From Octopus bimaculoides (taxonomy: Eukaryota): 50,142 bases of DNA. Positions within the stretch are counted from its first letter, which is position 1. Each line of letters starts with the position of its first letter. This document shows positions 1 to 39,276 of the stretch, one piece after another. The notes under the pieces are model-generated. The model ran no database searches, was not told the origin of the DNA, and saw only the letters and a list, made by a program, of their open reading frames with translations. Location: NCBI RefSeq assembly GCF_001194135.2, contig NC_068991.1, forward strand, positions 8,238,256 through 8,288,397. Direction: 5' to 3'. A program made the translations under genes and the position numbers.

Positions 1-778
1 CCGACATGTCATGTAATGTTATGAATTGTATCTGCCCCTCTGGCGAATCTCCGACATGTCATGTAATGTTATGAGTTGGATCTGCGCCTCTGGCGAATCT
101 CCGACATGTCATGTAATGTTATGAGTTTGGTCTGCCCCTCTGGCGAATCTCCGACATGTCATGTAATGTTATGAATTGGATCTGCCCCTCTGGCGAATCT
201 CCATGTCATGTAATGTTATGAGTTGGGTCTACCCCTCTGGCGAATCTCCGACATGTCATGTAATGTTATGAATTGTATCTGCCCCTCTGGCGAATCTCCA
301 TGTCATGTAATGTTATGAATTTTATCTGCCCCTCTGGCGAATCTCCATGTCATGTAATGTTATGAGTTAGGTCTGCCCCTCTGGCGAATCTCCGACATGT
401 CATGTAATGTTATGAATTGGATCTGCCCCTCTGGCGAATCTCCGACATGTCATGTAATGTTATGAGTTGTGTCTGCCCCTCTGGCGAATCTCCATGTCAT
501 GTAATGTTATGAATTGGATCTGCCCCTCTGGCCAATCTCCGACTTGTCATGTAATGTTATGGATTGAGTCTGCCCCTCTGGCGAATCTCCGACATGTCAT
601 GTAATGTTATGAGTTGGATCTGCCCCTCTGGCGAATCCNNNNNNNNNNNNNNNNNNNNNNNNNNNNCAATCTCCGACTTGTCATGTAATGTTATGGATTG
701 AGTCTGCCCCTCTGGCGAATCTCCGACATGTCATGTAATGTTATGAGTTGGATCTGCCCCTCTGGCGAATCCCCGACA
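1..778. repeat. 50-bp tandem minisatellite, ~15 copies in the window, running off the left edge
   Basis: Unit CCGACATGTCATGTAATGTTATGARTTGNNTCTGCCCCTCTGGCGAATCT; 47-bp variants lack GAC. Confidence 0.97.
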
Positions 779-4395: not shown

Positions 4396-5069
4396 AAGCC
4401 AAACACAAAATGAAAGGTATGACTTGCACAAATAGATAAAAAAAAAAAATCAAATGTGAATGATTATGAACAAATAAAAAAAAAACAACTTTCAAAGTTA
4501 GAAAATAGAATTTTTTTAGTACCGTTTGTTTCTGAACTTGCCTGGGCTGAAATCAAATATAAAACACTCCATGAAGATATTTTGAAAAAAACTTATGTTA
4601 TTTCATCATTGTACAAAAATTATTAAAATGAAATTAACAGGAAAAAAAAATCTTTAAATTTTATTTTACAAATCTAAAAATTACAATTTCTCTNNNNNNN
4701 NNNNNNNNNNNNNNNNNNNNNNNNNNNNNNNNNNNNNNNNNNNNNNNNNNNNNNNNNNNNNNNNNNNNNNNNNNNNNNNNNNNNNNNNNNNNNNNNNNNN
4801 NNNNNNNNNNNNNNNNNNNNNNNNNNNNNNNNNNNNNNNNNNNNNNNNNNNNNNNNNNNNNNNNNNNNNNNNNNNNNNNNNNNNNNNNNNNNNNNNNNNN
4901 NNNNNNNNNNNNNNNNNNNNNNNNNNNNNNNNNNNNNNNNNNNNNNNNNNNNNNNNNNNNNNNNNNNNNNNNNNNNNNNNNNNNNNNNNNNNNNNNNNNN
5001 NNNNNNNNNNNNNNNNNNNNNNNNNNNNNNNNNNNNNNNNNNNNNNNNNNNNNNNNNNNNNNNNNNNNN

Positions 5070-6616: not shown

Positions 6617-7264
6617 GGAAACAGAGGCATAGAATTACAGCCAGCTTGTCTTGTGGTGTTGTCTTTGAAACAACAAGACAATGATAAAAAGAAAAAAAAA
6701 AAAAANNNNNNNNNNAAAAAAAAAAAAAAAAAAAAGAACTGAAACTATTTGTTAAATGAGAGAAATAATTTGAAATTAGTTCTTCAAACGATCTGTACAA
6801 GATAACCAGTTGTAACTAAGACAGTAACTGCAAGTTAGTTACACAAAAAAATTCAGAATCTAAATTTCAATGACTATTTGCTATACATTATTTCCAAAAG
6901 AGAATAGGACTATGAATAATTAAGATAGATTAATAACCTTTTTTGTTTTTATATATAAACCTGAACTAGCAACAAAAATATATTTTGTCTAATTTGATGG
7001 AGCATGCAGAAACATGTAATTCAGTTGTGAAACATTAGATGAATCCAAACCAGAAGAAAGTAGACAGAGATATTAATGTAAGATGGGTTGATTGATTGAG
7101 CTGATCACAGGTAATTGTATGATAAAATAGCAGATGAAGAATAATAAGGAAGGAAAAGGAGAATCCAGAGGTATAAAAACGAATTAAAGAGAATGGATGA
7201 ATTTAAAAATAAAACTCATGACAATAGAAATACAAAAATTATATGTAAACTTAGTCTTTACACA

Positions 7265-8203: not shown

Positions 8204-9770
8204 TCAATAATCAGAAGTTGCAACAGGCGATGGAGGTGGTGGATAGGGATTGAAACTACGCTCTGTAGAAGGTGATGGAGGACAACTCATATCGTCAGAT
8301 AAATAATGACTCCGTGGAGAAGGTGGAGGCGGGTGTGGGGCAGAGTCATAACTAAGTTCAATTAGCGAGTGATTTAAATAGTACTTCTGACATGGGTAGG
8401 GTTCACTTTCTTCATACACATCTGTACTATAAGGGGTTGTTGGTGGTGGAGGAATGTGCCGGAACTTGTATGTCCGAAATGAACGAACCGTGGAAGGACT
8501 ATTGGAAGAGTAACAGAAATCTCCCGTGTATAATGAACGGTCTGTGACAGGGGTCGGTGGTGGATTTAGGGTTCCTTTCGGATATTGTGTTACAGTAGAG
8601 CTGCTAGATGAAGCCCCCGTCACGTGATTCCTGTCATAAAGAGGGGCAGGGCCGGAGCTCAGGGACAAACCAGTTCCAACAGATTTACCACGAGAAAACA
8701 TTGTGTGTGGGGGGGTGATATTTTTGGGGCATGGGTTTAAAGGTTTATTAACCATCATTATTTCATGATCATTGGCAGTATTAGGTGGTGACTTACGGCG
8801 ACAAGCGAACACAATAACTAATATAAGCAGTGAGACAAAGACCACCACAAAACCGACCGTGTATTGAGCAGTGTTAGTATCACGCATTGGCGCTGGCCTG
8901 GGGAACTGACAATCCCACTCATCAGAACCATCGGGACAGTCATCTCGCTTGTTGCAGCGTAACTCAGAATTAATGCAAGGACCGTCATTACAATACGTTT
9001 GACCACTGGGACAACATTTTTCTTCGTCGGAACCATCTTCGCAGTCTTTCTCACCATTGCAGACCAAAATCTTTTTTATCACGTCTCCATTAGCACAAGT
9101 AAAACGCATTGTCATGACAGGACAGTTGCTTTCATCCGATTCATCGACGCACTCGGCAATACCGTCGCAGTGCCATGCAGCAGGGATACATTTGATATCA
9201 CCTGTAACACATGTAAACTGTTCAGGAGAGCAAGTTGGTGGGTCGGAACAAGTCTGCTCGTCATTTGTAAGAGCCAAGGCGACCGGGCAAGAACAACGTG
9301 CAGTACCATCCCCTTTCGCTACACAAATATGAGAACATTTGCCAGTGTCAGGATAGCAGGGATGCTTTTGGAAGTCTTCTTCACTAATCATCTGAACAGC
9401 ATGGATATCGGTTAATCCCTGAATGCGACGACCTTGCATACGATATCTTACATGAGTATCAGCATGATTGATCCACTGAATAAGCTGTTGGTCTTTATCA
9501 ATCCAGTAAACATATTGTCCAAGAACAGCTAATCCATTTGGATGTTCAATTTCACTGTCGACGAGAATTTTCCGGTTTCCACCGGAGAGGTCAGAACACT
9601 CGATGCGGTTTAATTCCAAGTCGGACCAGTATAAACGCTGGGATTTGTAATCAATAGTCAGAGCAGTTGGGTGTTTCAAGTCATTTCCAAAAAGAACTGT
9701 TTTTTCTGTTCCATCCATAGCGGCCATTTCAATCTTCGGAGGTTTCACCATGTTGGTCCAATAAATATGA
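8204..9770 (-). CDS. LRP5/6: LRP5/6 terminal exon E16: rest of propeller 4, EGF4, three LDLa modules, TM (~8801-8860), cytoplasmic tail with S/T cluster and five PPP(S/T)P motifs, stop TGA
   Basis: Acceptor ttgcag|T CAT ATT TAT TGG; uninterrupted 1567-nt frame; motifs PPPTP, PPTTP, PPPSP, CPPSP, PPPSP. Confidence 0.97.
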
Positions 9771-9867
9771 CTGCAACGACAATAAAATAATTCAGTAAGA
9801 ACAAATGAAATGGAAACACGAACGGGACAGACACGTGAAACGACAACAGCAACAAAGCAATACGTAC

Positions 9868-10067
9868 CCCTGTTCTGGGTTCAGAACAAGTGACCGAGGC
9901 TTCTCTTCCGTATCGCTAACCACAGTACCGACGTCTGTCATATCGATGTGAGTAACATTGATTACATTATTCTGAGAACATGACCAATAAATATGATGAG
10001 AGAATGGATCAATAGCCAAATCGTGTGGGTGGAAGTAGTTTGATGGATTCGGTACCACTGTTGATAC
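9868..10067 (-). CDS. LRP5/6: LRP5/6 exon E15, propeller 4 (VSTVVPNPSNYFHPHDLAIDPFSHHIYWSC...LNPEQG)
   Basis: Acceptor cctttag|GTA (phase 0), donor GG|GTACGT; 200 nt. Confidence 0.93.
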
Positions 10068-11130: not shown

Positions 11131-11229
11131 CACACACACAATTAAAGGTTACAAACCTCATTCAGGAATAGCAAAATCCTATGAAAGTACTGGTTAATTA
11201 CCAATACAAAATAGAGTATNNNNNNNNNN

Positions 11230-11812: not shown

Positions 11813-12636
11813 NNNNNNNNNNNNNNNNNNNNNNNNNNNNNNNNNNNNNNNNNNNNNNNNNNNNNNNNNNNNNNNNNNNNNNNNNNNNNNNNNNNNNNNN
11901 NNNNNNNNNNNNNNNNNNNNNNNNNNNNNNNNNNNNNNNNNNNNNNNNNNNNNNNNNNNNNNNNNNNNNNNNNNNNNNNNNNNNNNNNNNNNNNNNNNNN
12001 NNNNNNNNNNNNNNNNNNNNNNNNNNNNNNNNNNNNNNNNNNNNNNNNNNNNNNNNNNNNNNNNNNNNNNNNNNNNNNNNNNNNNNNNNNNNNNNNNNNN
12101 NNNNNNNNNNNNNNNNNNNNNNNNNNNNNNNNNNNNNNNNNNNNNNNNNNNNNNNNNNNNNNNNNNNNNNNNNNNNNNNNNNNNNNNNNNNNNNNNNNNN
12201 NNNNNNNNNNNNNNNNNNNNNNNNNNNNNNNNNNNNNNNNNNNNNNNNNNNNNNNNNNNNNNNNNNNNNNNNNNNNNNNNNNNNNNNNNNNNNNNNNNNN
12301 NNNNNNNNNNNNNNNNNNNNNNNNNNNNNNNNNNNNNNNNNNNNNNNNNNNNNNNNNNNNNNNNNNNNNNNNNNNNNNNNNNNNNNNNNNNNNNNNNNNN
12401 NNNTAGCGAAATGTGTATTGTACAATACAAATAAGATGATATTCATTCTTTGAATGTAGAATTGCCTTTAAAAATGGCAGAGATCCTGGGTAAATTACCC
12501 TACAAAGCAGAAAAATTTGTCAAGGCTGTTTGTTGACAAATTTTTCCATTTAGAAAAAAAAAAAAATAAAAAAAAAAAAGAAAAGAAAAGTCTTATTTGT
12601 ATCGTACACTATTCCAAGAATTTATAAAGGTCTTAC

Positions 12637-12839
12637 CTCTGTACCATTCTCTCTTGATCTCTTAATAGTCTTTGACCGGCCATCAATCCAGTAAACATAT
12701 TTATCATAAACGTCATAATCAATAGCCTTTACATTGCGCAGGTTATGAATGGGTAAAACACTTGGAGGAAGATGTTCAGAGTTTGGCACCAAACGACTAA
12801 GGTCACCCTTTTGACTAAACAATAAAAAAGACTCTGGCG
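12637..12839 (-). CDS. LRP5/6: LRP5/6 exon E14, propeller 4 start (PESFLLFSQKG...YWIDG...NGTE)
   Basis: Acceptor ctttcag|CG, donor GAG|GTAAGA; 203 nt. Confidence 0.94.
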
Positions 12840-13484: not shown

Positions 13485-13640
13485 GGGAACAAGTTTTATT
13501 GTCTTCTCCCAATGAATAATGAGTTGGGCAGGCACAAGTGAAATATATATTGTTATCAGGGTCCATTTGATCAAATAAGGCAGGATGAGCCAAGCACAAA
13601 TGAGAACAGTTACCATTATCACCTCCACATGGGTTCCAAC
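13485..13640 (-). CDS. LRP5/6: LRP5/6 exon E13, EGF3 ([52 protein letters not shown])
   Basis: Acceptor ctgacag|GT, donor C|GTAAGT; 156 nt, phase 1-1; six Cys. Confidence 0.95.
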
Positions 13641-13940: not shown

Positions 13941-14281
13941 CGATAGGATACGAAATATCTGAGATAACATGGAGAGTAATATTGAGGGGGGGGGGGTGAT
14001 GAGAGGTTAACGTATGATAGAGGGACAAGAACAGGAGATACATGGTTGGTTCATGTGGCAGAGAAAGAGGATGCTGGTGAAGATGTATCAGGGAATACCC
14101 CCAAGTTACAGGCGGGTGGATAAAAGAAAAGTAGTATGGGTAAGTTCATGCGGGTACAAGATGTGAGTAGCAGGTGGATAGAGGGAAATGCAATGAATGG
14201 TGAATGGCAATCTTGTAATTAAAACAAACATAACATAAACCAAATAAATTTTAAAACGCAGTAAGGTATATATAATTTTAC

Positions 14282-14488
14282 CAGGCTGACGTGACTCTTG
14301 AAAAACCAGGATATCCATTACAAAATCGTCATGGCTTTGGTGGATTGTTGTACGGTTGGTTCCGGTTAACTTGTGGGCACGTTCAATTGTGTTCTTCTCT
14401 AAATCAGTCCAGTAGATAAAATCTTTGTATTGGGTGATGCCACGTGGATATTGTAAATAACTGTCTATGATCACTTGTCTGTTTTGAC
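14282..14488 (-). CDS. LRP5/6: LRP5/6 exon E12, propeller 3 end ([29 protein letters not shown]...ESRQP)
   Basis: Acceptor ttttcag|GT, donor G|GTAAAA; 207 nt, phase 1-1. Confidence 0.94.
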
Positions 14489-15422: not shown

Positions 15423-15607
15423 CTAACATATCTGAAGATTCGATACGTTTATTATCTAAATCAGTCCAATAAAGCCTATTGTCAGCATAGTCGATAGTCA
15501 AACCAGCAACGCGACCAAGATCAAATACTAAAACCTTTCGGTTTTTGCCATCTAATGAGGCTCTCTCCAGCTTTGGTTTTTCTCCCCAATCTGTCCAGTA
15601 CATGTAT
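15423..15607 (-). CDS. LRP5/6: LRP5/6 exon E11, propeller 3 ([20 protein letters not shown]...SSDML)
   Basis: Acceptor tttctag|A, donor G|GTATGT; 185 nt. Confidence 0.95.
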
Positions 15608-16620: not shown

Positions 16621-16847
16621 CCTTCAGGTGGATCCAATACTATTGAGCGTGGGTTGGATAGATTCTTCCAGATGAGCACGCGACGTGACTTGCCATCAAG
16701 ACGAGCAACCTCTATTCGCTTTGTCCCAATGTCAGTCCAATAAAGATTTTTAGCAATCCAATCTACAGCCATTCCTTCAGGATATTCAATTCCAAATTCT
16801 ATTATGTGTTCTAGAGAGCTACCATTCATAAATGCACGACTTATTTG
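16621..16847 (-). CDS. LRP5/6: LRP5/6 exon E10, propeller 3 ([19 protein letters not shown]...LDPPEG)
   Basis: Acceptor atttcag|CAA, donor GG|GTTTGT (weak, phase 2); 227 nt. Confidence 0.92.
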
Positions 16848-17714
16848 CTGAAATATCAAATAAAGGAGTCGAGATTGAAATTATAGTCATGTAAAAGAAG
16901 AAAAAAANNNNNNNNNNAAAAAAAAAAAAAAAAAAAAAAAAAAAGAAAACCAACATTATATCAAAATAAACTTGGCCATAATTAAGAGTTAATTACAATA
17001 AATAGCAACTTCTTTAATTTGTATTTTCTTTTCTTTTGTATGAAGCAAAGTTTGGATGGTTTGACAAATTCGAATTCTCACTGCCACCACCAGCTTCTCC
17101 TTTTTCTAACTATGGTAGCCATGTATCTCCTCTACAGCAAGACACCTTTAACTACTAATTACCTGGTATAAATACTTGGTTCCCCCTCAGTTGAGAGGTT
17201 TTATCATGTCAGTCGACTTTGCCTTTCATCCTTTTGAAGTAGATAAACTAAGTACCATTTGAGCACAGGGGTTGATGTAATCGACTTAACTACTCCTGAG
17301 TGCGAGTATAAAAAACTGCACACACTCTGCCGTGCCATGTCAAACCTGTGTGGAAGAGTTGGCTCATCAAACCAGTATGATCTCAAGTTCAAATTCAAGG
17401 CCTGTACATCTGTTGGGTGGAGAAAATATGTTGAGGCCTTCATCCTGCAATGGACTGAACAATGGCAATCTAATCCAATCTACTGAGTTACTCAGTGACC
17501 TCAAAGGTGCCAGTGCCACTTAAAAAGCACCCAAAACAGTCTGTAAAGTAATTGATATTGGGAAGGACATCCAGCCATAGAACATGCCAAAAACAGACAT
17601 CATCCAACCCATGCTAGCATGGAAAGCCGACATTAAATGATGATGATGATGAGGTAAATCATAAAAGAACGGAAAAATGAAAAAAAAAAGGTCTTCATTA
17701 TACAAGATACCTAC

Positions 17715-18013
17715 TTTAAGTGAAGCATCTGTCCAATATATCCTATTATCACTGTTATCAAAATCCAGGGAGTGTGCATCTTTAACTGACTGGATGGGAA
17801 TTAACACATCATTGTGGTTAGTTTCGAGTGAAATACGGCGAATATCTTCTTTTCGAGAGAACAGAAGGAATCCATCAGGAACTACACAGGTCTTCTCATC
17901 ATTAAGGAGCTCAAAGAAAATCCCAGTAGGACATGCACACACAGGGCCCTTTGGGAATGTATTTAAACATAGATGACTACAACCACCATTGTTTTCAACA
18001 CAACCATTAGTTC
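17715..18013 (-). CDS. LRP5/6: LRP5/6 exon E9, EGF2 plus propeller 3 start ([15 protein letters not shown]...[10 protein letters not shown])
   Basis: Acceptor ttttcag|GA, donor AAA|GTAGGT (phase 0); 299 nt. Confidence 0.94.
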
Positions 18014-19077: not shown

Positions 19078-19218
19078 CTTCAACTTGGTGCATGCTAACC
19101 GCCTTTAGTCCCATCAAATCTGGAAGTTGGTCGATAATTACTTGACGTTTTCCACCAGTAAGTTTATGCACACGTTCAATGGATCGCCTTTGCCAATCGG
19201 TCCAGTATACATAGTCAC
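19078..19218 (-). CDS. LRP5/6: LRP5/6 exon E8, propeller 2 end ([47 protein letters not shown])
   Basis: Not in the ORF track; translated by hand. Acceptor ttgtcag|GT, donor G|GTAAAG; 141 nt, phase 1-1. Confidence 0.95.
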
Positions 19219-20148: not shown

Positions 20149-20399
20149 CTAGTAAACTGAATCCAAATATATGAGGTAAATCATTTGATACAAGAACAAC
20201 TCTGTTAGTTCCGTCAAGGTTGGAGAATTCAATCATGTCCGTTTTAGCGTCTCCCCAATAAAGCTTCTTCTCGTGGTAGTCAATAGCAACACCATTTGGC
20301 CAGCCTAATGAAGAATTAATCAGAGCTACTCGTTCAGAGCCATCCATGTTGGCCCTTTCTATCTTTGGAGTTGTTCCCCAATCAGTCCAATACATGTGT
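20149..20399 (-). CDS. LRP5/6: LRP5/6 exon E7, propeller 2 ([20 protein letters not shown]...PHIFGFSLL)
   Basis: Acceptor ttgcag|A, donor G|GTAAGT; 251 nt. Confidence 0.95.
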
Positions 20400-21750: not shown

Positions 21751-21946
21751 CCTCGAATGGGATCAAGACAAATAGCTCTCGGCTCAGCCAATCCTTCTGA
21801 AATAAGCACCTTGCGCGATGTTCCATTCAAGCGACAAACTTCAATACGATCTGTCCCCGTGTCAGTCCAGTACAAATTACGCCCTATCCAATCAACTGCC
21901 ACACCGTCCGGATGTTTCACTTCAGTGCTAACTACTATTTCTTGAC
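21751..21946 (-). CDS. LRP5/6: LRP5/6 exon E6, propeller 2 ([29 protein letters not shown]...LDPIRG)
   Basis: Acceptor aaacag|GT, donor GG|GTAAAT; 196 nt. Confidence 0.94.
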
Positions 21947-23683: not shown

Positions 23684-23884
23684 CAGATCCATCCATGTGA
23701 GCTCGTCGAATGAGATGTATATTGTCATCAGTCCAGTAAACATAGTCCTCAACGGGGTCATAGTCTATGGCAATGGTGTGTTGGATGTCATTTAGCTGAA
23801 GAATCACATCAGTATAATCAGGTGTATCCAGGGATATTCGACGCAAATCTGATCTTCGAGCCAAAAGAAGAATTTCCTTAGGAC
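23684..23884 (-). CDS. LRP5/6: LRP5/6 exon E5, propeller 2 start ([23 protein letters not shown]...RAHMDGS)
   Basis: Acceptor tttatag|GT. Donor G|GTTATT is weak but is the phase-1 site giving DGS-G-QEIVV; 201 nt. Confidence 0.9.
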
Positions 23885-24689: not shown

Positions 24690-24821
24690 TGCCAGGACAA
24701 GTTTGGCCGTTTTCGTGAATACGAATTCCCGTCGGACATGCACAAGAGTAAAAAGGTGCTTGAGGAGACATTAGACACAAGTGAGAACATCCACCATTGT
24801 TGTGACCGCATGGATTTATTT
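24690..24821 (-). CDS. LRP5/6: LRP5/6 exon E4, EGF1 ([43 protein letters not shown])
   Basis: Translated by hand (the ORF track shows another frame). Six-Cys EGF; acceptor aattag|AA, donor A|GTGAGT; 132 nt, phase 1-1. Confidence 0.95.
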
Positions 24822-25152: not shown

Positions 25153-25508
25153 TAACAAGAGCACTCAGAGAGTGCAAACCACCACCAACGCTCTCTATTG
25201 AGATCAGCCAGAGATGATTTTTAAAATGAGAATATCTGAAATAAACTCAACTGCTCTCACAAACAAGAATACTAAAAATGAACCTGACTGTTCTCAAAAA
25301 AATTTTTTTTTAAACGGAAAAGTAATCCAGAATCCTTGTCTAGAACCAGATCAATCCCCAAATCTAACCAGTTTGTACCAGTCATGAAGCTAAACATCCT
25401 TGAAAGTTTCATCCGAATCCATCCAGCGGTTCTTGAGATATCTTGTCCACGGACAAACAAACACGACTGAAAACAATACCTAACTGCCTTTGCTAAAGCA
25501 GAGGTAAT
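25153..25508 (+). mobile_element. Helentron-associated (HINE-like) non-autonomous element
   Basis: 5' hairpin GCACTC-AGA-GAGTGC (25161-25175); 3' TACCT..CTGC-CTTTGCTAAA-GCAG-AGGTA hairpin (~25478-25506). Confidence 0.5.
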
Positions 25509-25904
25509 GATGAGGACATCAGTCTGACTAATACAAACAATAAACATAACATAAATTCTTCATCCCAGAAATATAAAATTGTAGTGTTTATGTACTTAAG
25601 CATAAAGACTGAATGAATAGGGGACCAGAATTTAAGACAGTGGCTCCAGAAAATATATCTAATGGCAAATATTATGTCATCATTGTTCTTACTAATAAAG
25701 TTGGCACCTGCATGTATGTGCTCAGTTTTAAAAATTTTATTAGCAAGGATAGTAACAGAATTATTATCGTGCTTCAGCTCAATCAGGTCTGTCGAGAACC
25801 CCAAATATCATAAGGCCAGAGCACAATTCAATTTATATGACATATATGTGATTGAGATTACAACAGACATCTCTGAACTGGATGCCAGCCCATCACAAAG
25901 TTAA

Positions 25905-26070
25905 CTCCTCATTTATTGCTGAAACTCACTTACAGCTGAGTGGACTCCAGTCCACTCAATATGAAATGACGTGTTTTGCTCAAGAACAAAATGCACTGTT
26001 CAGTTCAGGTATTGAAACCACAATCTTATGACCATGAGTGCAACACCCTAACCACCAGGCCATACATCTT
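25905..26070 (-). mobile_element. tRNA-SINE fragment (family C-related)
   Basis: Reverse complement of GGCCTGGTGGTTAGGGTG...GGTTTCAATACC...TTGAGCAAAACAC. Confidence 0.65.
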
Positions 26071-27038
26071 CACAGGTTAACCAACACACATTTTCGATTA
26101 CAGAGATGTAAACAGGAACATTAAACTGTAGAAAGGACATATAAGCCTTTGTCCATGTTAACAATAATAAAAGGACCTCAATTAATACCTCTGGACAACA
26201 GGAAACGGTATTAGGGAGTCAGATAAATTTGATCTTTTTTTCCCGTTATTTATTTTAATCCTTTCCAATGTTCTTTGAACTAACAAGTTTATATGACAAC
26301 AAGAAACACAACAGAGGGCTGCAATGTCAAACTCTCCCCTTCATCAAAAGCCAATGGTCATTGAAAATTGATTACACTGGTGGTACCCCAGCATGGCCAC
26401 AGTCTTTGGGCTGAAACTCATAAAAGAATAATGTTTTATTGAATTTTTGTAGATCACTTCTTCTACAACTTCTGTTTATCACTTTTGAAATATGAATAAA
26501 TGTTATCTTTTTTCAGATGTATGATGTTGGAATACCAAGCAGAAAAATTTTTTAAATCAAATTTATCTGACAACCCAATACTTTGTAAACTCTCATTTTC
26601 ATAAGTACCAAACTTAAATGAATCATTAAGGAGAGAATTCATGCTAAAAATGTTCAGCCTACAAGCTGGCTTACAAAGACTACACAAACTAGAGAGTGTA
26701 TTCATAAGATATCTGAGTTATTAATCTAATACTTATACATCTCTGCAAATCTTTGCTATCTTGGGTACCAGGGTATTAGATTTCAAATCTTAAACTCCGA
26801 GATAAATAATCTATTTTTAAATAGTCATTGACACCATGGTCAAACTGAACAAATCACTGCCAAGTAAGCTTAATTTTGTAAATCAACACAAAAACATTTC
26901 CCATGCTCCTGATTTGGAACTATATTGAAGAATATCTTTCACAGTTTATAACAAATTTCCTTAATTCTATCAAAAACTTACAAGACCTACATAAAACTCA
27001 TTGCCTGCAAACACACTGAACAGGATGACACACATGGG

Positions 27039-27310
27039 TGCAGGAGTAATGGTATGGTAAGAAGTTTGCTTACCAACCATATAGTTCTGGGTTCAGTCCC
27101 ACTGTGTGGAACCTAAGGTAAGTGTCTTCTTCTACAACCTTGGGCCAGTCAAAGCCTTGTGAGTGGATTTGGTAGGGAGAAACTGAAAGAAGCCAGTCGT
27201 ATATATAATGGGGCACTCCGTCAGTTGACTGTGAAGGTTCCAGTTGATCTGATCAACAGAATGCCCTGTTCATGAAAGTAATGTGCAAGTGGCTGAGCAC
27301 TCCACAGACT
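27039..27310 (+). mobile_element. Family-A SINE (+) followed by the 3' part of a family-C SINE (-)
   Basis: Family-A head 27039-27205; GGCACTCCGTC...GCAAGTGGCTGAGCACTCCACAG matches 3712-3810. Confidence 0.75.
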
Positions 27311-27505
27311 GTGCTGGTATGGCTATGTGATACGTATGGATGAGGACAGCTGCTCTCAGCAGGTTCAATACCTAGGATCTCCATTTAGGTCTTTTCTTTG
27401 CCATTCTTACACATTCGCCATATGACGGTTCAGTTTAGTTCTTGTAATCAAACCAGTTTGTTCTAGGTCTTCCTCTCGAGTGTTTGCCCTCTATTTTTTC
27501 TTCTA

Positions 27506-28367: not shown

Positions 28368-28768
28368 TGCTAGGCTGTCTCTTGGCAGTGTAGACATGAA
28401 TATCCATTGGTGAGAAGATATCACTGTGTACCACCTCCTTATTGTTCCCAGTTCTCTTATCACATGAATAAATGGCACGGGTGTGCCAATCTGTCCAAAA
28501 AAGTGTTTCTTCAAAGAGTGTCAATGCAAAAGGATGAGGTAAAGAACCTTCTACAACTGGCCTGCGATCAGATCCATCAAAATTACAACTATGAATAAAA
28601 TTGAGTTTGGCATCAGCCCAATAAATTTTGGAATCATCATAGTCTAAAGTCAAGCCATTTGGCCAGTGGATATCTTCACTTATTATCACAGAACGATTTA
28701 ATTTATTCCCATCCATTCCAGCACGTTCAATTTTAGGCCGCTCACCCCAGTCTGTCCAGTACATATAG
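28368..28768 (-). CDS. LRP5/6: LRP5/6 exon E3, propeller 1 C-half ([20 protein letters not shown]...KRQPS)
   Basis: Acceptor tttacag|C (phase 2), donor A|GTGAGT (phase 1); 401 nt. Confidence 0.96.
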
Positions 28769-34683: not shown

Positions 34684-34696
34684 NNNNNNNNNNGAA

Positions 34697-38377: not shown

Positions 38378-38448
38378 ANNNNNNNNNNNNNNNNNNNNNN
38401 NNNNNNNNNNNNNNNNNNNNNNNNNNNNNNNNNNNNNNTATATATATA

Positions 38449-38885: not shown

Positions 38886-39276
38886 CCGTTTAAAGGATCC
38901 AGAGCAATAGCCCGTGGCTGATCTAAATTTTCCCAAAATAATATTTTACGAAATGATCCATTCAAATTACTGACTTCAATCCGATTGGTTTCGGAATCAG
39001 TCCAATAAAGCTTTTTTCCTAGCCAATCAAGGGCTAAACCATCCGGCGATAACAATCCAAATGTAATCACATTGGTGCTGGTTTGGGAGCCGTTTATATA
39101 GGTTCTTTTAATCATTTCCAAGCTGACATCAGTCCAAAAGACTGAGTTCTCAGCATAGAAGAAATCCACTGCAGCAGCATCTTCAAGGCCACTGATTATC
39201 ACAGAAGAATTCTGTGAGTCTGCTGCATCAACAAGACGCACATCTTTGCGATTAGCAAACAGCAACAGTGGTGAAC
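38886..39276 (-). CDS. LRP5/6: LRP5/6 exon E2, propeller 1 N-half ([17 protein letters not shown]...[12 protein letters not shown])
   Basis: Acceptor tttcag|GT (phase 1), donor GG|GTAAG (phase 2); 391 nt; contains FWTD and YWTD. Confidence 0.96.

What the first reader, a model, noticed from the sequence alone, without database searches (positions are those of the whole stretch)
8204..9770. Polar intron loss: one 1567-nt terminal coding exon replaces about nine vertebrate exons
Seen: upstream coding exons are 132-401 nt, then a single exon spans half of propeller 4, EGF4, all LDLa modules, the TM and the whole tail. Knowledge (from memory of the 23-exon human LRP6, to be verified): most upstream junctions here coincide in position and phase with human ones (matching exon sizes 132, 227, 185, 203, and 201+196=397), and human has about 8 further introns 3' of this point. 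Inference: a contiguous block of 3' introns was removed precisely, the pattern expected from recombination with a reverse-transcribed mRNA primed at the poly(A) tail. The locus is full of RTE-LINE relics that could have supplied RT.
Basis: partly seen in the sequence, partly recalled or inferred. Interest (0 to 1): 0.72.

Follow-up and report, generated by a model that had tools for sequence, protein, structure and literature searches.

The report
Octopus LRP6 giant last exon
The octopus Wnt co-receptor gene LRP6 ends in one 1.57-kb coding exon where amphioxus, a bird and a sea cucumber have seven to nine small exons, but a snail, bivalves, an annelid and a brachiopod have the same giant exon, so it is an old inherited gene structure (probably one ancient block loss of introns), not an octopus novelty.

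Summary
On the minus strand, 9770..8204 is a single 1567-nt last coding exon of Octopus bimaculoides LRP6; my gene model matches the public protein at 100%. It encodes the second half of propeller 4, EGF4, three LDLa modules, the TM helix and the PPPSP tail. The same stretch is 9 exons in bird LRP5, 8 in amphioxus and 7 in a sea cucumber.

A gastropod (1600 nt), a bivalve (1549), an annelid (1591) and a brachiopod (1642) have the same terminal exon, starting at the same phase-2 junction. All share the 15 upstream introns with amphioxus. A nematode that keeps 12 of those 15 also has none of the eight 3' introns. The state therefore predates the split of molluscs, annelids and brachiopods, perhaps all protostomes. 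It says nothing about coleoids or local LINE relics.

Loss is the likelier direction but unproven. Six of the introns are shared between chordates and an echinoderm. Three lie exactly where propeller unit 3 has introns in all bilaterians. No cnidarian or sponge gene structure could be obtained. This is an ordinary, already annotated gene structure and a tidy example of a known pattern.

The parts
8204..9770 (-). Terminal coding exon of LRP6 (exon 16), 1567 nt including stop TGA at 8206..8204
   Evidence: ORF and translation; acceptor AG at 9772-9771; identical to the public protein P0294
9771..9867 (-). Last intron, 97 nt, phase 2, GTACGT...TTGCAG. It is by far the shortest in the gene (the others are 641-10117 nt). 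It sits at the junction conserved in all four propeller units.
9868..10067 (-). Exon 15 (200 nt), first part of propeller 4
12637..12839 (-). Exon 14 (203 nt)
13485..13640 (-). Exon 13 (156 nt), EGF3, phase 1-1
14282..14488 (-). Exon 12 (207 nt)
15423..15607 (-). Exon 11 (185 nt)
16621..16847 (-). Exon 10 (227 nt)
17715..18013 (-). Exon 9 (299 nt)
19078..19218 (-). Exon 8 (141 nt)
20149..20399 (-). Exon 7 (251 nt)
21751..21946 (-). Exon 6 (196 nt)
23684..23884 (-). Exon 5 (201 nt)
24690..24821 (-). Exon 4 (132 nt), EGF1, phase 1-1
28368..28768 (-). Exon 3 (401 nt)
38886..39276 (-). Exon 2 (391 nt). Exon 1 (signal peptide, 55 nt by analogy) was not found in the window.
9365..9769 (-). Second half of YWTD propeller 4, inside the terminal exon
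   Evidence: Pfam Ldl_recept_b x2; coordinates
9248..9364 (-). EGF4
8909..9235 (-). LDLa1 (9235-9122), LDLa2 (9121-9014, lacking Cys1 and Cys3) and LDLa3 (9013-8909)
8801..8863 (-). Transmembrane helix YTVGFVVVFVSLLILVIVFAC
   Evidence: sequence
8207..8800 (-). Cytoplasmic tail with five PPP(S/T)P-type motifs at 8563-8549, 8452-8432, 8332-8315, 8281-8270 and 8242-8225
9582..9583 (-). Site of deuterostome intron 'octopus aa 1144, phase 1' (amphioxus, sea cucumber, bird); continuous here
9369..9370 (-). Site of deuterostome intron 1215 phase 1 (EGF4 start; all three deuterostomes)
9243..9244 (-). Site of deuterostome intron 1257 phase 1 (EGF4 end; all three deuterostomes)
9120..9121 (-). Site of deuterostome intron 1298 phase 1 (LDLa1|LDLa2; amphioxus and sea cucumber)
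9012..9013 (-). Site of deuterostome intron 1334 phase 1 (LDLa2|LDLa3; amphioxus and bird). The linker here is 2-3 residues shorter in the protostomes sampled (1 shorter in Trichinella).
8907..8908 (-). Site of deuterostome intron 1369 phase 1 (after LDLa3; all three deuterostomes)
8697..8698 (-). Site of chordate intron 1439 phase 1 (amphioxus and bird)
8474..8475 (-). Site of deuterostome intron 1513 phase 2 (bird and sea cucumber; context RSY|RxY)

Best explanation
The 1567-nt exon is the normal, already annotated last exon of Octopus bimaculoides LRP6 (the Wnt co-receptor, arrow/LRP5/6). It is long because eight introns that deuterostomes carry between propeller 4 and the end of the tail are absent, while all 15 upstream introns are kept. 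This state is inherited. The same exon, with the same start and phase, is present in a gastropod, a bivalve, an annelid and a brachiopod. All three ecdysozoans sampled also lack the eight introns. The most likely history is one event, before the mollusc-annelid-brachiopod split and possibly on the protostome stem. In it, the 3' part of the gene was replaced by recombination or gene conversion with a partial, 3'-anchored cDNA of its own spliced mRNA, erasing all introns downstream of the tract's 5' end. Shown: the exon, its content, its distribution across phyla, and the deuterostome intron positions. Inferred: that the introns are ancestral (loss, not gain), that it was a single event, and that a cDNA was the agent.
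For: Gene model and identity. Same terminal exon elsewhere: Gigantopelta 1600 nt and Pinctada 1549 nt; Owenia 1591 nt and Lingula 1642 nt. Identical upstream exon sizes and phases. Uninterrupted ORFs beginning at or within about 10 residues of the same boundary, most similar to oyster, mussel, clams, Solemya and a nemertean. Environmental contigs with a single HSP starting at the exon boundary. Deuterostome introns: amphioxus has 7, bird 8 and sea cucumber 6 in this stretch. Six positions are shared between chordates and the echinoderm. Polarity: in an alignment of the four propeller-EGF units, the deuterostome unit-4 introns (1144, 1215, 1257; phase 1) fall on the same columns and phase as the unit-3 introns (826, 895, 947) present in octopus, Lingula and amphioxus alike. 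The other sites are phase-1 module boundaries of LDLa repeats, the classic exon-shuffling layout of the LDL-receptor family (established knowledge). Block character: all 8 missing introns are the 8 most 3' of 23, P = 2e-6 under independent loss. Joints are flush at 6 of 8 sites. Trichinella keeps 12 of 15 upstream introns but none of the eight. The LDLa2-LDLa3 linker at site 1334 is shortened in all protostomes sampled relative to deuterostomes and two sponges. The RT model predicts simultaneous loss of adjacent introns and a 3' bias (PMC3652778).
Against: No non-bilaterian gene structure was obtained, so gain on the deuterostome stem is not excluded by an outgroup. Trichinella has an intron within about two codons of site 1439 but in phase 2 rather than 1. 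If that is the same intron displaced, the protostome ancestor still had it, and nematode and lophotrochozoan losses would be partly separate. Two of the eight joints (1334, 1439) differ by 2-4 residues from deuterostomes, so removal was not demonstrably exact there. Two unassigned environmental sequences (P0088, P0116) have an uninterrupted 3' region, branch near the base of Bilateria in a crude NJ tree and best-hit deuterostomes. If they are cnidarians from genomic DNA, they would favour the long exon being ancestral. Nothing survives in the sequence that shows the mechanism of so old an event.
Confidence: 0.6

Rival explanations
1. The long terminal exon is the ancestral bilaterian state. 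The eight introns were inserted on the deuterostome stem, with one or two more later in chordates or vertebrates.
For: Every protostome sampled lacks them and no outgroup gene structure was obtained. The unassigned sequences P0088 and P0116, with a continuous 3' region, branch near the bilaterian base.
Against: It needs at least six independent insertions confined to one third of the gene. Three of them would have to land at exactly the columns and phase where paralogous unit 3 already has introns in all bilaterians, and three at phase-1 LDLa module borders. No gain in the other two thirds of the gene is shared by the deuterostomes sampled. Sponge and deuterostome proteins share the longer LDLa2-LDLa3 linker, so the protostome state looks derived.
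Confidence: 0.22
2. One reading: a recent, cephalopod- or coleoid-specific cDNA-mediated loss, with reverse transcriptase supplied by RTE LINEs in the locus.
For: Only the block pattern itself.
Against: The same exon with the same boundary is present in a gastropod, a bivalve, an annelid and a brachiopod. No RT domain was found in the ten longest non-exon ORFs of the window.
Confidence: 0.01
3. The introns were ancestral but disappeared piecemeal or in several independent events (separately in Lophotrochozoa and in ecdysozoan lines), by genomic deletion or repeated cDNA conversion. There was no single protostome-stem event.
For: Intron loss is rampant in this gene elsewhere: the wasp has 2 introns, the mite 3, and Owenia lost an internal block of 3. 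Trichinella has an intron about two codons from site 1439 in another phase, and joints 1334 and 1439 are not flush.
Against: Five lophotrochozoans from three phyla show no intermediate state: 0 of 8 retained and 15 of 15 upstream kept, except Owenia. Trichinella also shows 0 of 8 against 12 of 15. The shortened 1334 linker is shared by lophotrochozoans and ecdysozoans.
Confidence: 0.17

Closest known systems
Reverse-transcriptase (mRNA-mediated) model of intron loss: recombination of genomic DNA with a cDNA, giving precise, simultaneous loss of adjacent introns with a 3' bias (summarised in PMC3652778)
   Same: All missing introns are adjacent and are the 3'-most of the gene. Upstream introns are untouched. 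Six of eight joints are flush.
   Different: The event is hundreds of millions of years old and shared by whole phyla, so none of the model's other predictions (germline expression, processed pseudogenes, RT source) can be examined. Two joints are not flush. Ancestral presence of the introns is inferred, not shown with an outgroup.
Vertebrate LRP5 and LRP6 genes (23 exons from memory; bird LRP5 partial locus analysed here)
   Same: Same protein architecture. The bird shares junctions 764(2), 826(1), 947(1), 1015(0) and 1081(2) with octopus, with exon sizes 185 and 203 recurring.
   Different: The bird has 9 exons where octopus has 1. It lacks the 895 intron that octopus, amphioxus and sea cucumber have. 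The human gene itself was not examined.
Amphioxus LRP6 (Branchiostoma lanceolatum, 23 exons)
   Same: The first 15 exons match octopus one for one in order and phase, with six of them the same size: 55, 406, 395, 135, 201, 196, 251, 141, 290, 227, 185, 213, 159, 203, 203.
   Different: The 3' part is 8 exons (188, 210, 126, 123, 114, 111, 246, 527) instead of one.
Insect arrow/LRP6 (Aphidius gifuensis)
   Same: Orthologue, also without the eight 3' introns.
   Different: Nearly all introns are gone (3 exons: 97, 2041, 2824 nt), so it is uninformative on the block.

Membership tests
LRP5/6 (arrow) Wnt co-receptor | Four YWTD beta-propeller + EGF units in the ectodomain | tested here: met
   The spliced model gives four units that align with each other and with LRP6 of other phyla. 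PDB LRP6 ectodomain chains match.
LRP5/6 (arrow) Wnt co-receptor | Exactly three LDLa modules between EGF4 and a single TM helix | tested here: met
   Pfam Ldl_recept_a x3; module and TM coordinates. LDLa2 lacks two cysteines.
LRP5/6 (arrow) Wnt co-receptor | Cytoplasmic tail with five PPP(S/T)P phosphorylation motifs | tested here: met
   PPPTP, PPPPTTP, PPPPSP, PPSP and PPPPSP, in the same order as in bird, amphioxus and Lingula.
LRP5/6 (arrow) Wnt co-receptor | Orthology to annotated LRP6 | tested here: met
   100% identical to 'LRP6 [Octopus bimaculoides]' over residues 20-1603; 58-64% identical to LRP6 of chiton, annelid, brachiopod, amphioxus and mammals.
LRP5/6 (arrow) Wnt co-receptor | Wnt co-receptor activity | not testable with these tools
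   Functional assay needed.
cDNA (RT)-mediated intron loss | The introns were present in the ancestor (it is a loss) | tested here: inconclusive
   Six sites are shared by chordates and an echinoderm. Three coincide with paralogous unit-3 introns present in all bilaterians. No cnidarian or sponge gene structure was obtained.
cDNA (RT)-mediated intron loss | Several adjacent introns removed together | tested here: met
   8 of 8 contiguous sites are empty in five lophotrochozoans, with no intermediate.
cDNA (RT)-mediated intron loss | 3' bias: the block abuts the 3' end | tested here: met
   The missing introns are the eight most 3' of 23; P = 2e-6 under independent loss.
cDNA (RT)-mediated intron loss | Exact excision with no gain or loss of coding bases | tested here: inconclusive
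   Flush at 1144, 1215, 1257, 1298, 1369 and 1513. There are 2-4-residue length differences at 1334 and 1439. After this much time, later indels cannot be separated from imprecise removal.
cDNA (RT)-mediated intron loss | Germline expression of the gene and an available reverse transcriptase at the time | not testable with these tools
   The event predates the phyla concerned. Present-day repeats are irrelevant, and no RT domain was seen in the ten longest non-exon ORFs.

The most novel reading that the evidence does not exclude
The empty 3' block, together with the shortened LDLa2-LDLa3 linker, is a single rare genomic change that arose once on the protostome stem. LRP5/6 gene structure would then be a clean presence/absence character for placing disputed lineages (chaetognaths, xenacoelomorphs, and others) relative to protostomes and deuterostomes.
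Probability: 0.3. Interest if true: 0.4.

Novelty: new member of a known kind. Interest (0 to 1): 0.2.

Why it matters
It matters little for octopus biology. The gene is an ordinary, already annotated LRP6, and its exon structure is the one common to the lophotrochozoans sampled. Its modest value is as an unusually clean example of all-or-none, 3'-anchored block absence of introns: 8 of 8 against 0 of 15. The pattern is conserved across at least three phyla and could serve as a rare-genomic-change marker once polarity is fixed with cnidarian or sponge genomes. For the scan it is also a caution. A difference from the vertebrate gene structure is not evidence of a lineage-specific event until close outgroups are checked.

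Tried and rejected
1. Non-bilaterian outgroup. A protein search with the sponge Oscarella LRP5/6 was swamped by LRP4 and returned no cnidarian. The one sponge with a genome record (Corticium candelabrum, isoform X2) was 'not on record' in the contig look-up.
2. JGI metagenome scan with a profile of the propeller-4 to LDLa3 region. It gave 79 contigs, many from LDLR-family paralogues. The LRP5/6-like ones show the same single exon but cannot be assigned to a taxon, and none was closest to sponges. One insect-like contig (L081) has introns in this region, but at positions unrelated to the deuterostome ones.
3. The 521-aa query returned only proteins of 908 aa or less, so named full-length orthologues were missed until the full-length model was used.
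4. Uninterrupted ORFs from Logan assemblies were treated with care. Some Logan contigs are transcripts (full-length 1588-1732 aa ORFs on 5-7 kb contigs). Only ORFs starting at or near the exon boundary were counted as supporting evidence.
5. A crude NJ tree to place unassigned ORFs was not resolving. P0088 and P0116 remain unidentified.
6. A Pfam scan of the ten longest non-exon ORFs for RT domains found none. This does not exclude degraded LINE fragments, but it is irrelevant to so old an event.
7. Literature searches for LRP5/6 intron evolution found nothing specific.
8. The bird locus has a tandem duplication in the EGF4 exon that broke exact mapping. The exon size there (~126) was inferred from the remainder.

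Full report
**What is there.** Window 9770..8204 on the minus strand is one open exon of 1567 nt. It follows a pyrimidine tract and an AG at 9772-9771. Its first base completes a codon, 521 codons follow, and a TGA stop sits at 8206..8204. Pfam finds two YWTD (Ldl_recept_b) repeats, an EGF and three LDLa modules. The best solved-structure relatives that cover the region colinearly are LRP6 ectodomain chains. Downstream lie a TM helix and a tail with five PPP(S/T)P-type motifs.

Using a gastropod LRP6 as a guide, I mapped 14 further exons upstream on the same strand. Their sizes are 391, 401, 132, 201, 196, 251, 141, 299, 227, 185, 207, 156, 203 and 200 nt, all GT-AG. The spliced product has no stop codon. 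It is 100% identical to residues 20-1603 of the public protein 'LRP6 [Octopus bimaculoides]'. Exon 1 (signal peptide) is not in the window.

**Check of the comparison with vertebrates.** A flycatcher LRP5 locus (partial model) splits the homologous stretch into 9 exons: 191, 210, ~126, 237, 111, 237, 140, 98 and 259+stop. The bird also shares the junctions at octopus residues 764(2), 826(1), 947(1), 1015(0) and 1081(2).

**Who else has the giant exon.** Exact protein-to-genome mapping gave the following.

| Species | Group | Exon sizes (nt) |
|---|---|---|
| Gigantopelta aegis | gastropod | 55, 394, 407, 132, 201, 196, 251, 141, 290, 227, 185, 204, 141, 218, 200, 1600 |
| Pinctada imbricata | bivalve | ...215, 1549 |
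| Owenia fusiformis | annelid | ...200, 1591 |
| Lingula anatina | brachiopod | 55, 406, 401, 132, 201, 196, 251, 141, 299, 227, 185, 207, 141, 206, 197, 1642 |

Intron phases are identical to octopus throughout. Many uninterrupted 500-560-aa ORFs from genomic contigs start at or within about 10 residues of the exon boundary. They are closest to oyster (100%), mussel, clams, Solemya and a nemertean. Environmental contigs show the same pattern. The structure is thus common to molluscs, an annelid and a brachiopod. It is not a cephalopod or coleoid feature.

**Who has the introns.** Amphioxus LRP6 has 23 exons. The first 15 match octopus one for one. The 3' part is 188, 210, 126, 123, 114, 111, 246 and 527 nt. 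A sea cucumber has 188, 207, 123, 123, 225, 538 and 280 nt there. Projected onto one alignment, in octopus residue numbers:

| Site (phase) | Amphioxus | Sea cucumber | Bird |
|---|---|---|---|
| 1144 (1) | yes | yes | yes |
| 1215 (1) | yes | yes | yes |
| 1257 (1) | yes | yes | yes |
| 1298 (1) | yes | yes | no |
| 1334 (1) | yes | no | yes |
| 1369 (1) | yes | yes | yes |
| 1439 (1) | yes | no | yes |
| 1481 (0) | no | no | yes |
| 1513 (2) | no | yes | yes |

At least six of these introns go back to the chordate-echinoderm ancestor, so 'vertebrate gain' is excluded. None is present in any protostome sampled.

**Ecdysozoans.** A wasp (3 exons) and a mite (4 exons) have lost almost everything and are uninformative. 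Trichinella is informative. It keeps 12 of the 15 upstream introns, including 1081(2), but has none of the eight. It has two introns of its own in the region. One is inside LDLa3. The other is about two codons from site 1439 but in phase 2 rather than 1, so its homology is unclear.

**Direction of change.** I could not obtain a cnidarian or sponge gene structure, so polarity rests on indirect evidence.
- I aligned the four propeller-EGF units with one another. The deuterostome unit-4 introns 1144, 1215 and 1257 fall on the same columns and phase as the unit-3 introns 826, 895 and 947. Octopus, Lingula and amphioxus all have those unit-3 introns. The EGF-start intron is present in units 1-3 of those species. 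Sponges already have all four units, so the introns most simply date from the duplication of the units.
- Sites 1257, 1298, 1334 and 1369 are phase-1 borders of LDLa modules, the classic exon-shuffling layout of this receptor family (established knowledge).
- The LDLa2-LDLa3 linker that hosts intron 1334 is 2-3 residues long in deuterostomes and in two sponges. It is absent or 1 residue long in all protostomes sampled, so the protostome state looks derived.

Together these favour loss. I put that at about 0.75.

**Block character and mechanism.** All eight missing introns are the eight most 3' of 23 inferred ancestral introns. Under independent loss that has probability 2e-6. Six of the eight joints are flush in the alignment. 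Simultaneous loss of adjacent introns with a 3' bias is what the cDNA-recombination (RT) model predicts (PMC3652778). The mechanism remains an inference, because nothing in a sequence this old can show it. The ten longest non-exon ORFs of the window have no RT domain.

**Caveats.**
- Two unassigned environmental sequences (P0088, P0116) have a continuous 3' region, best-hit deuterostomes at about 37% and branch near the bilaterian base in a crude tree. If they are cnidarians and genomic, they would argue for the opposite polarity.
- The Trichinella near-1439 intron leaves open that nematode and lophotrochozoan losses were partly separate.

**Verdict.** The gene and its structure are already in public annotation. 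I found no paper describing this particular case. It is a new instance of a well-known kind of event and of low interest beyond a possible use as a phylogenetic character.

Noticed in passing
window 9121-9014 (minus strand), LDLa2: The second LDLa module lacks Cys1 and Cys3, the two that pair with each other (CPVMTMRFTCANGDVIKK against CPxCSxxEFxCxxGxCI in other phyla). An 87%-identical octopod transcript (P0295) lacks them too. One disulfide of LDLa2 therefore seems to have been lost in octopods.
   Followed up: partly
window 9771-9867: The last intron is only 97 nt, whereas the other 13 mapped introns are 641-10117 nt. In Gigantopelta, Pinctada, Lingula and Owenia the same intron is 766, 371, 477 and 223 nt.
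   Followed up: no
L006 (Owenia fusiformis LRP6 locus): Owenia has a 769-nt exon where octopus, Lingula and amphioxus have four exons, so introns 826, 895 and 947 are missing. This is an independent internal block loss of three adjacent introns. Its annotation also has an 18-nt exon after the 401-nt exon, which is either a micro-exon or an annotation artefact.
   Followed up: no
L011 (Trichinella sp. T9 LRP6 locus): Trichinella keeps 12 of 15 ancestral upstream introns. It also has five introns at positions seen in no other species: 83(0), 235(0), 645(0), one inside LDLa3 in phase 1, and one about two codons from deuterostome site 1439 but in phase 2.
   Followed up: partly
L001 (Ficedula albicollis LRP5 locus) 14050-14276 and 25486-27354: The EGF4 exon is tandemly duplicated within the locus. 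The last two exons occur twice, about 1 kb apart (25486-26336 and 26504-27354), and a 101-aa gene is called on the second copy. This is probably an assembly artefact.
   Followed up: no
alignment of LDLa2-LDLa3 linker; window 9012-9013: All protostomes sampled (octopus, Gigantopelta, Owenia, Lingula, Lithobius, Halotydeus, Aphidius) have 'C-C' with no linker, and Trichinella has one residue. Deuterostomes and two sponges have 2-3 residues. The difference sits exactly at intron site 1334.
   Followed up: partly
L081 (JGI contig Ga0157363_1011138): An insect-like arrow/LRP6 (79% identical to Aphidius in part of the tail) has introns inside propeller 4, inside LDLa2 and in the tail. Neither Aphidius nor any deuterostome has these, so intron gain also occurs in this region.
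   Followed up: partly
window 639-666, 4694-5069, 6706-6715, 11220-11229, 11813-12403, 16908-16917, 34684-34693, 38379-38438: Assembly gaps (runs of N), several flanked by TA/CA-type microsatellites. The 11813-12403 gap lies in intron 13. A short element encoding '...RWASFSFCLPNPLTKLWSA...' recurs in several introns, probably a SINE-like repeat.
   Followed up: no
window >39276: Exon 1 of LRP6 (the first 18 codons, MDTFFNFYLL...) was not found in the 10.9 kb of window upstream of exon 2. Intron 1 is therefore longer than that or the exon lies in unassembled sequence.
   Followed up: partly
proteins P0088 and P0116 (Logan/JGI, no locus): Two related unassigned LRP5/6 C-terminal ORFs (596 and 579 aa, 69 and 26 cluster members) have all five PPPSP motifs, an EGF4 lacking the NGG motif and no close named relative. 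Their source organism is unknown, and it matters for the polarity question.
   Followed up: partly
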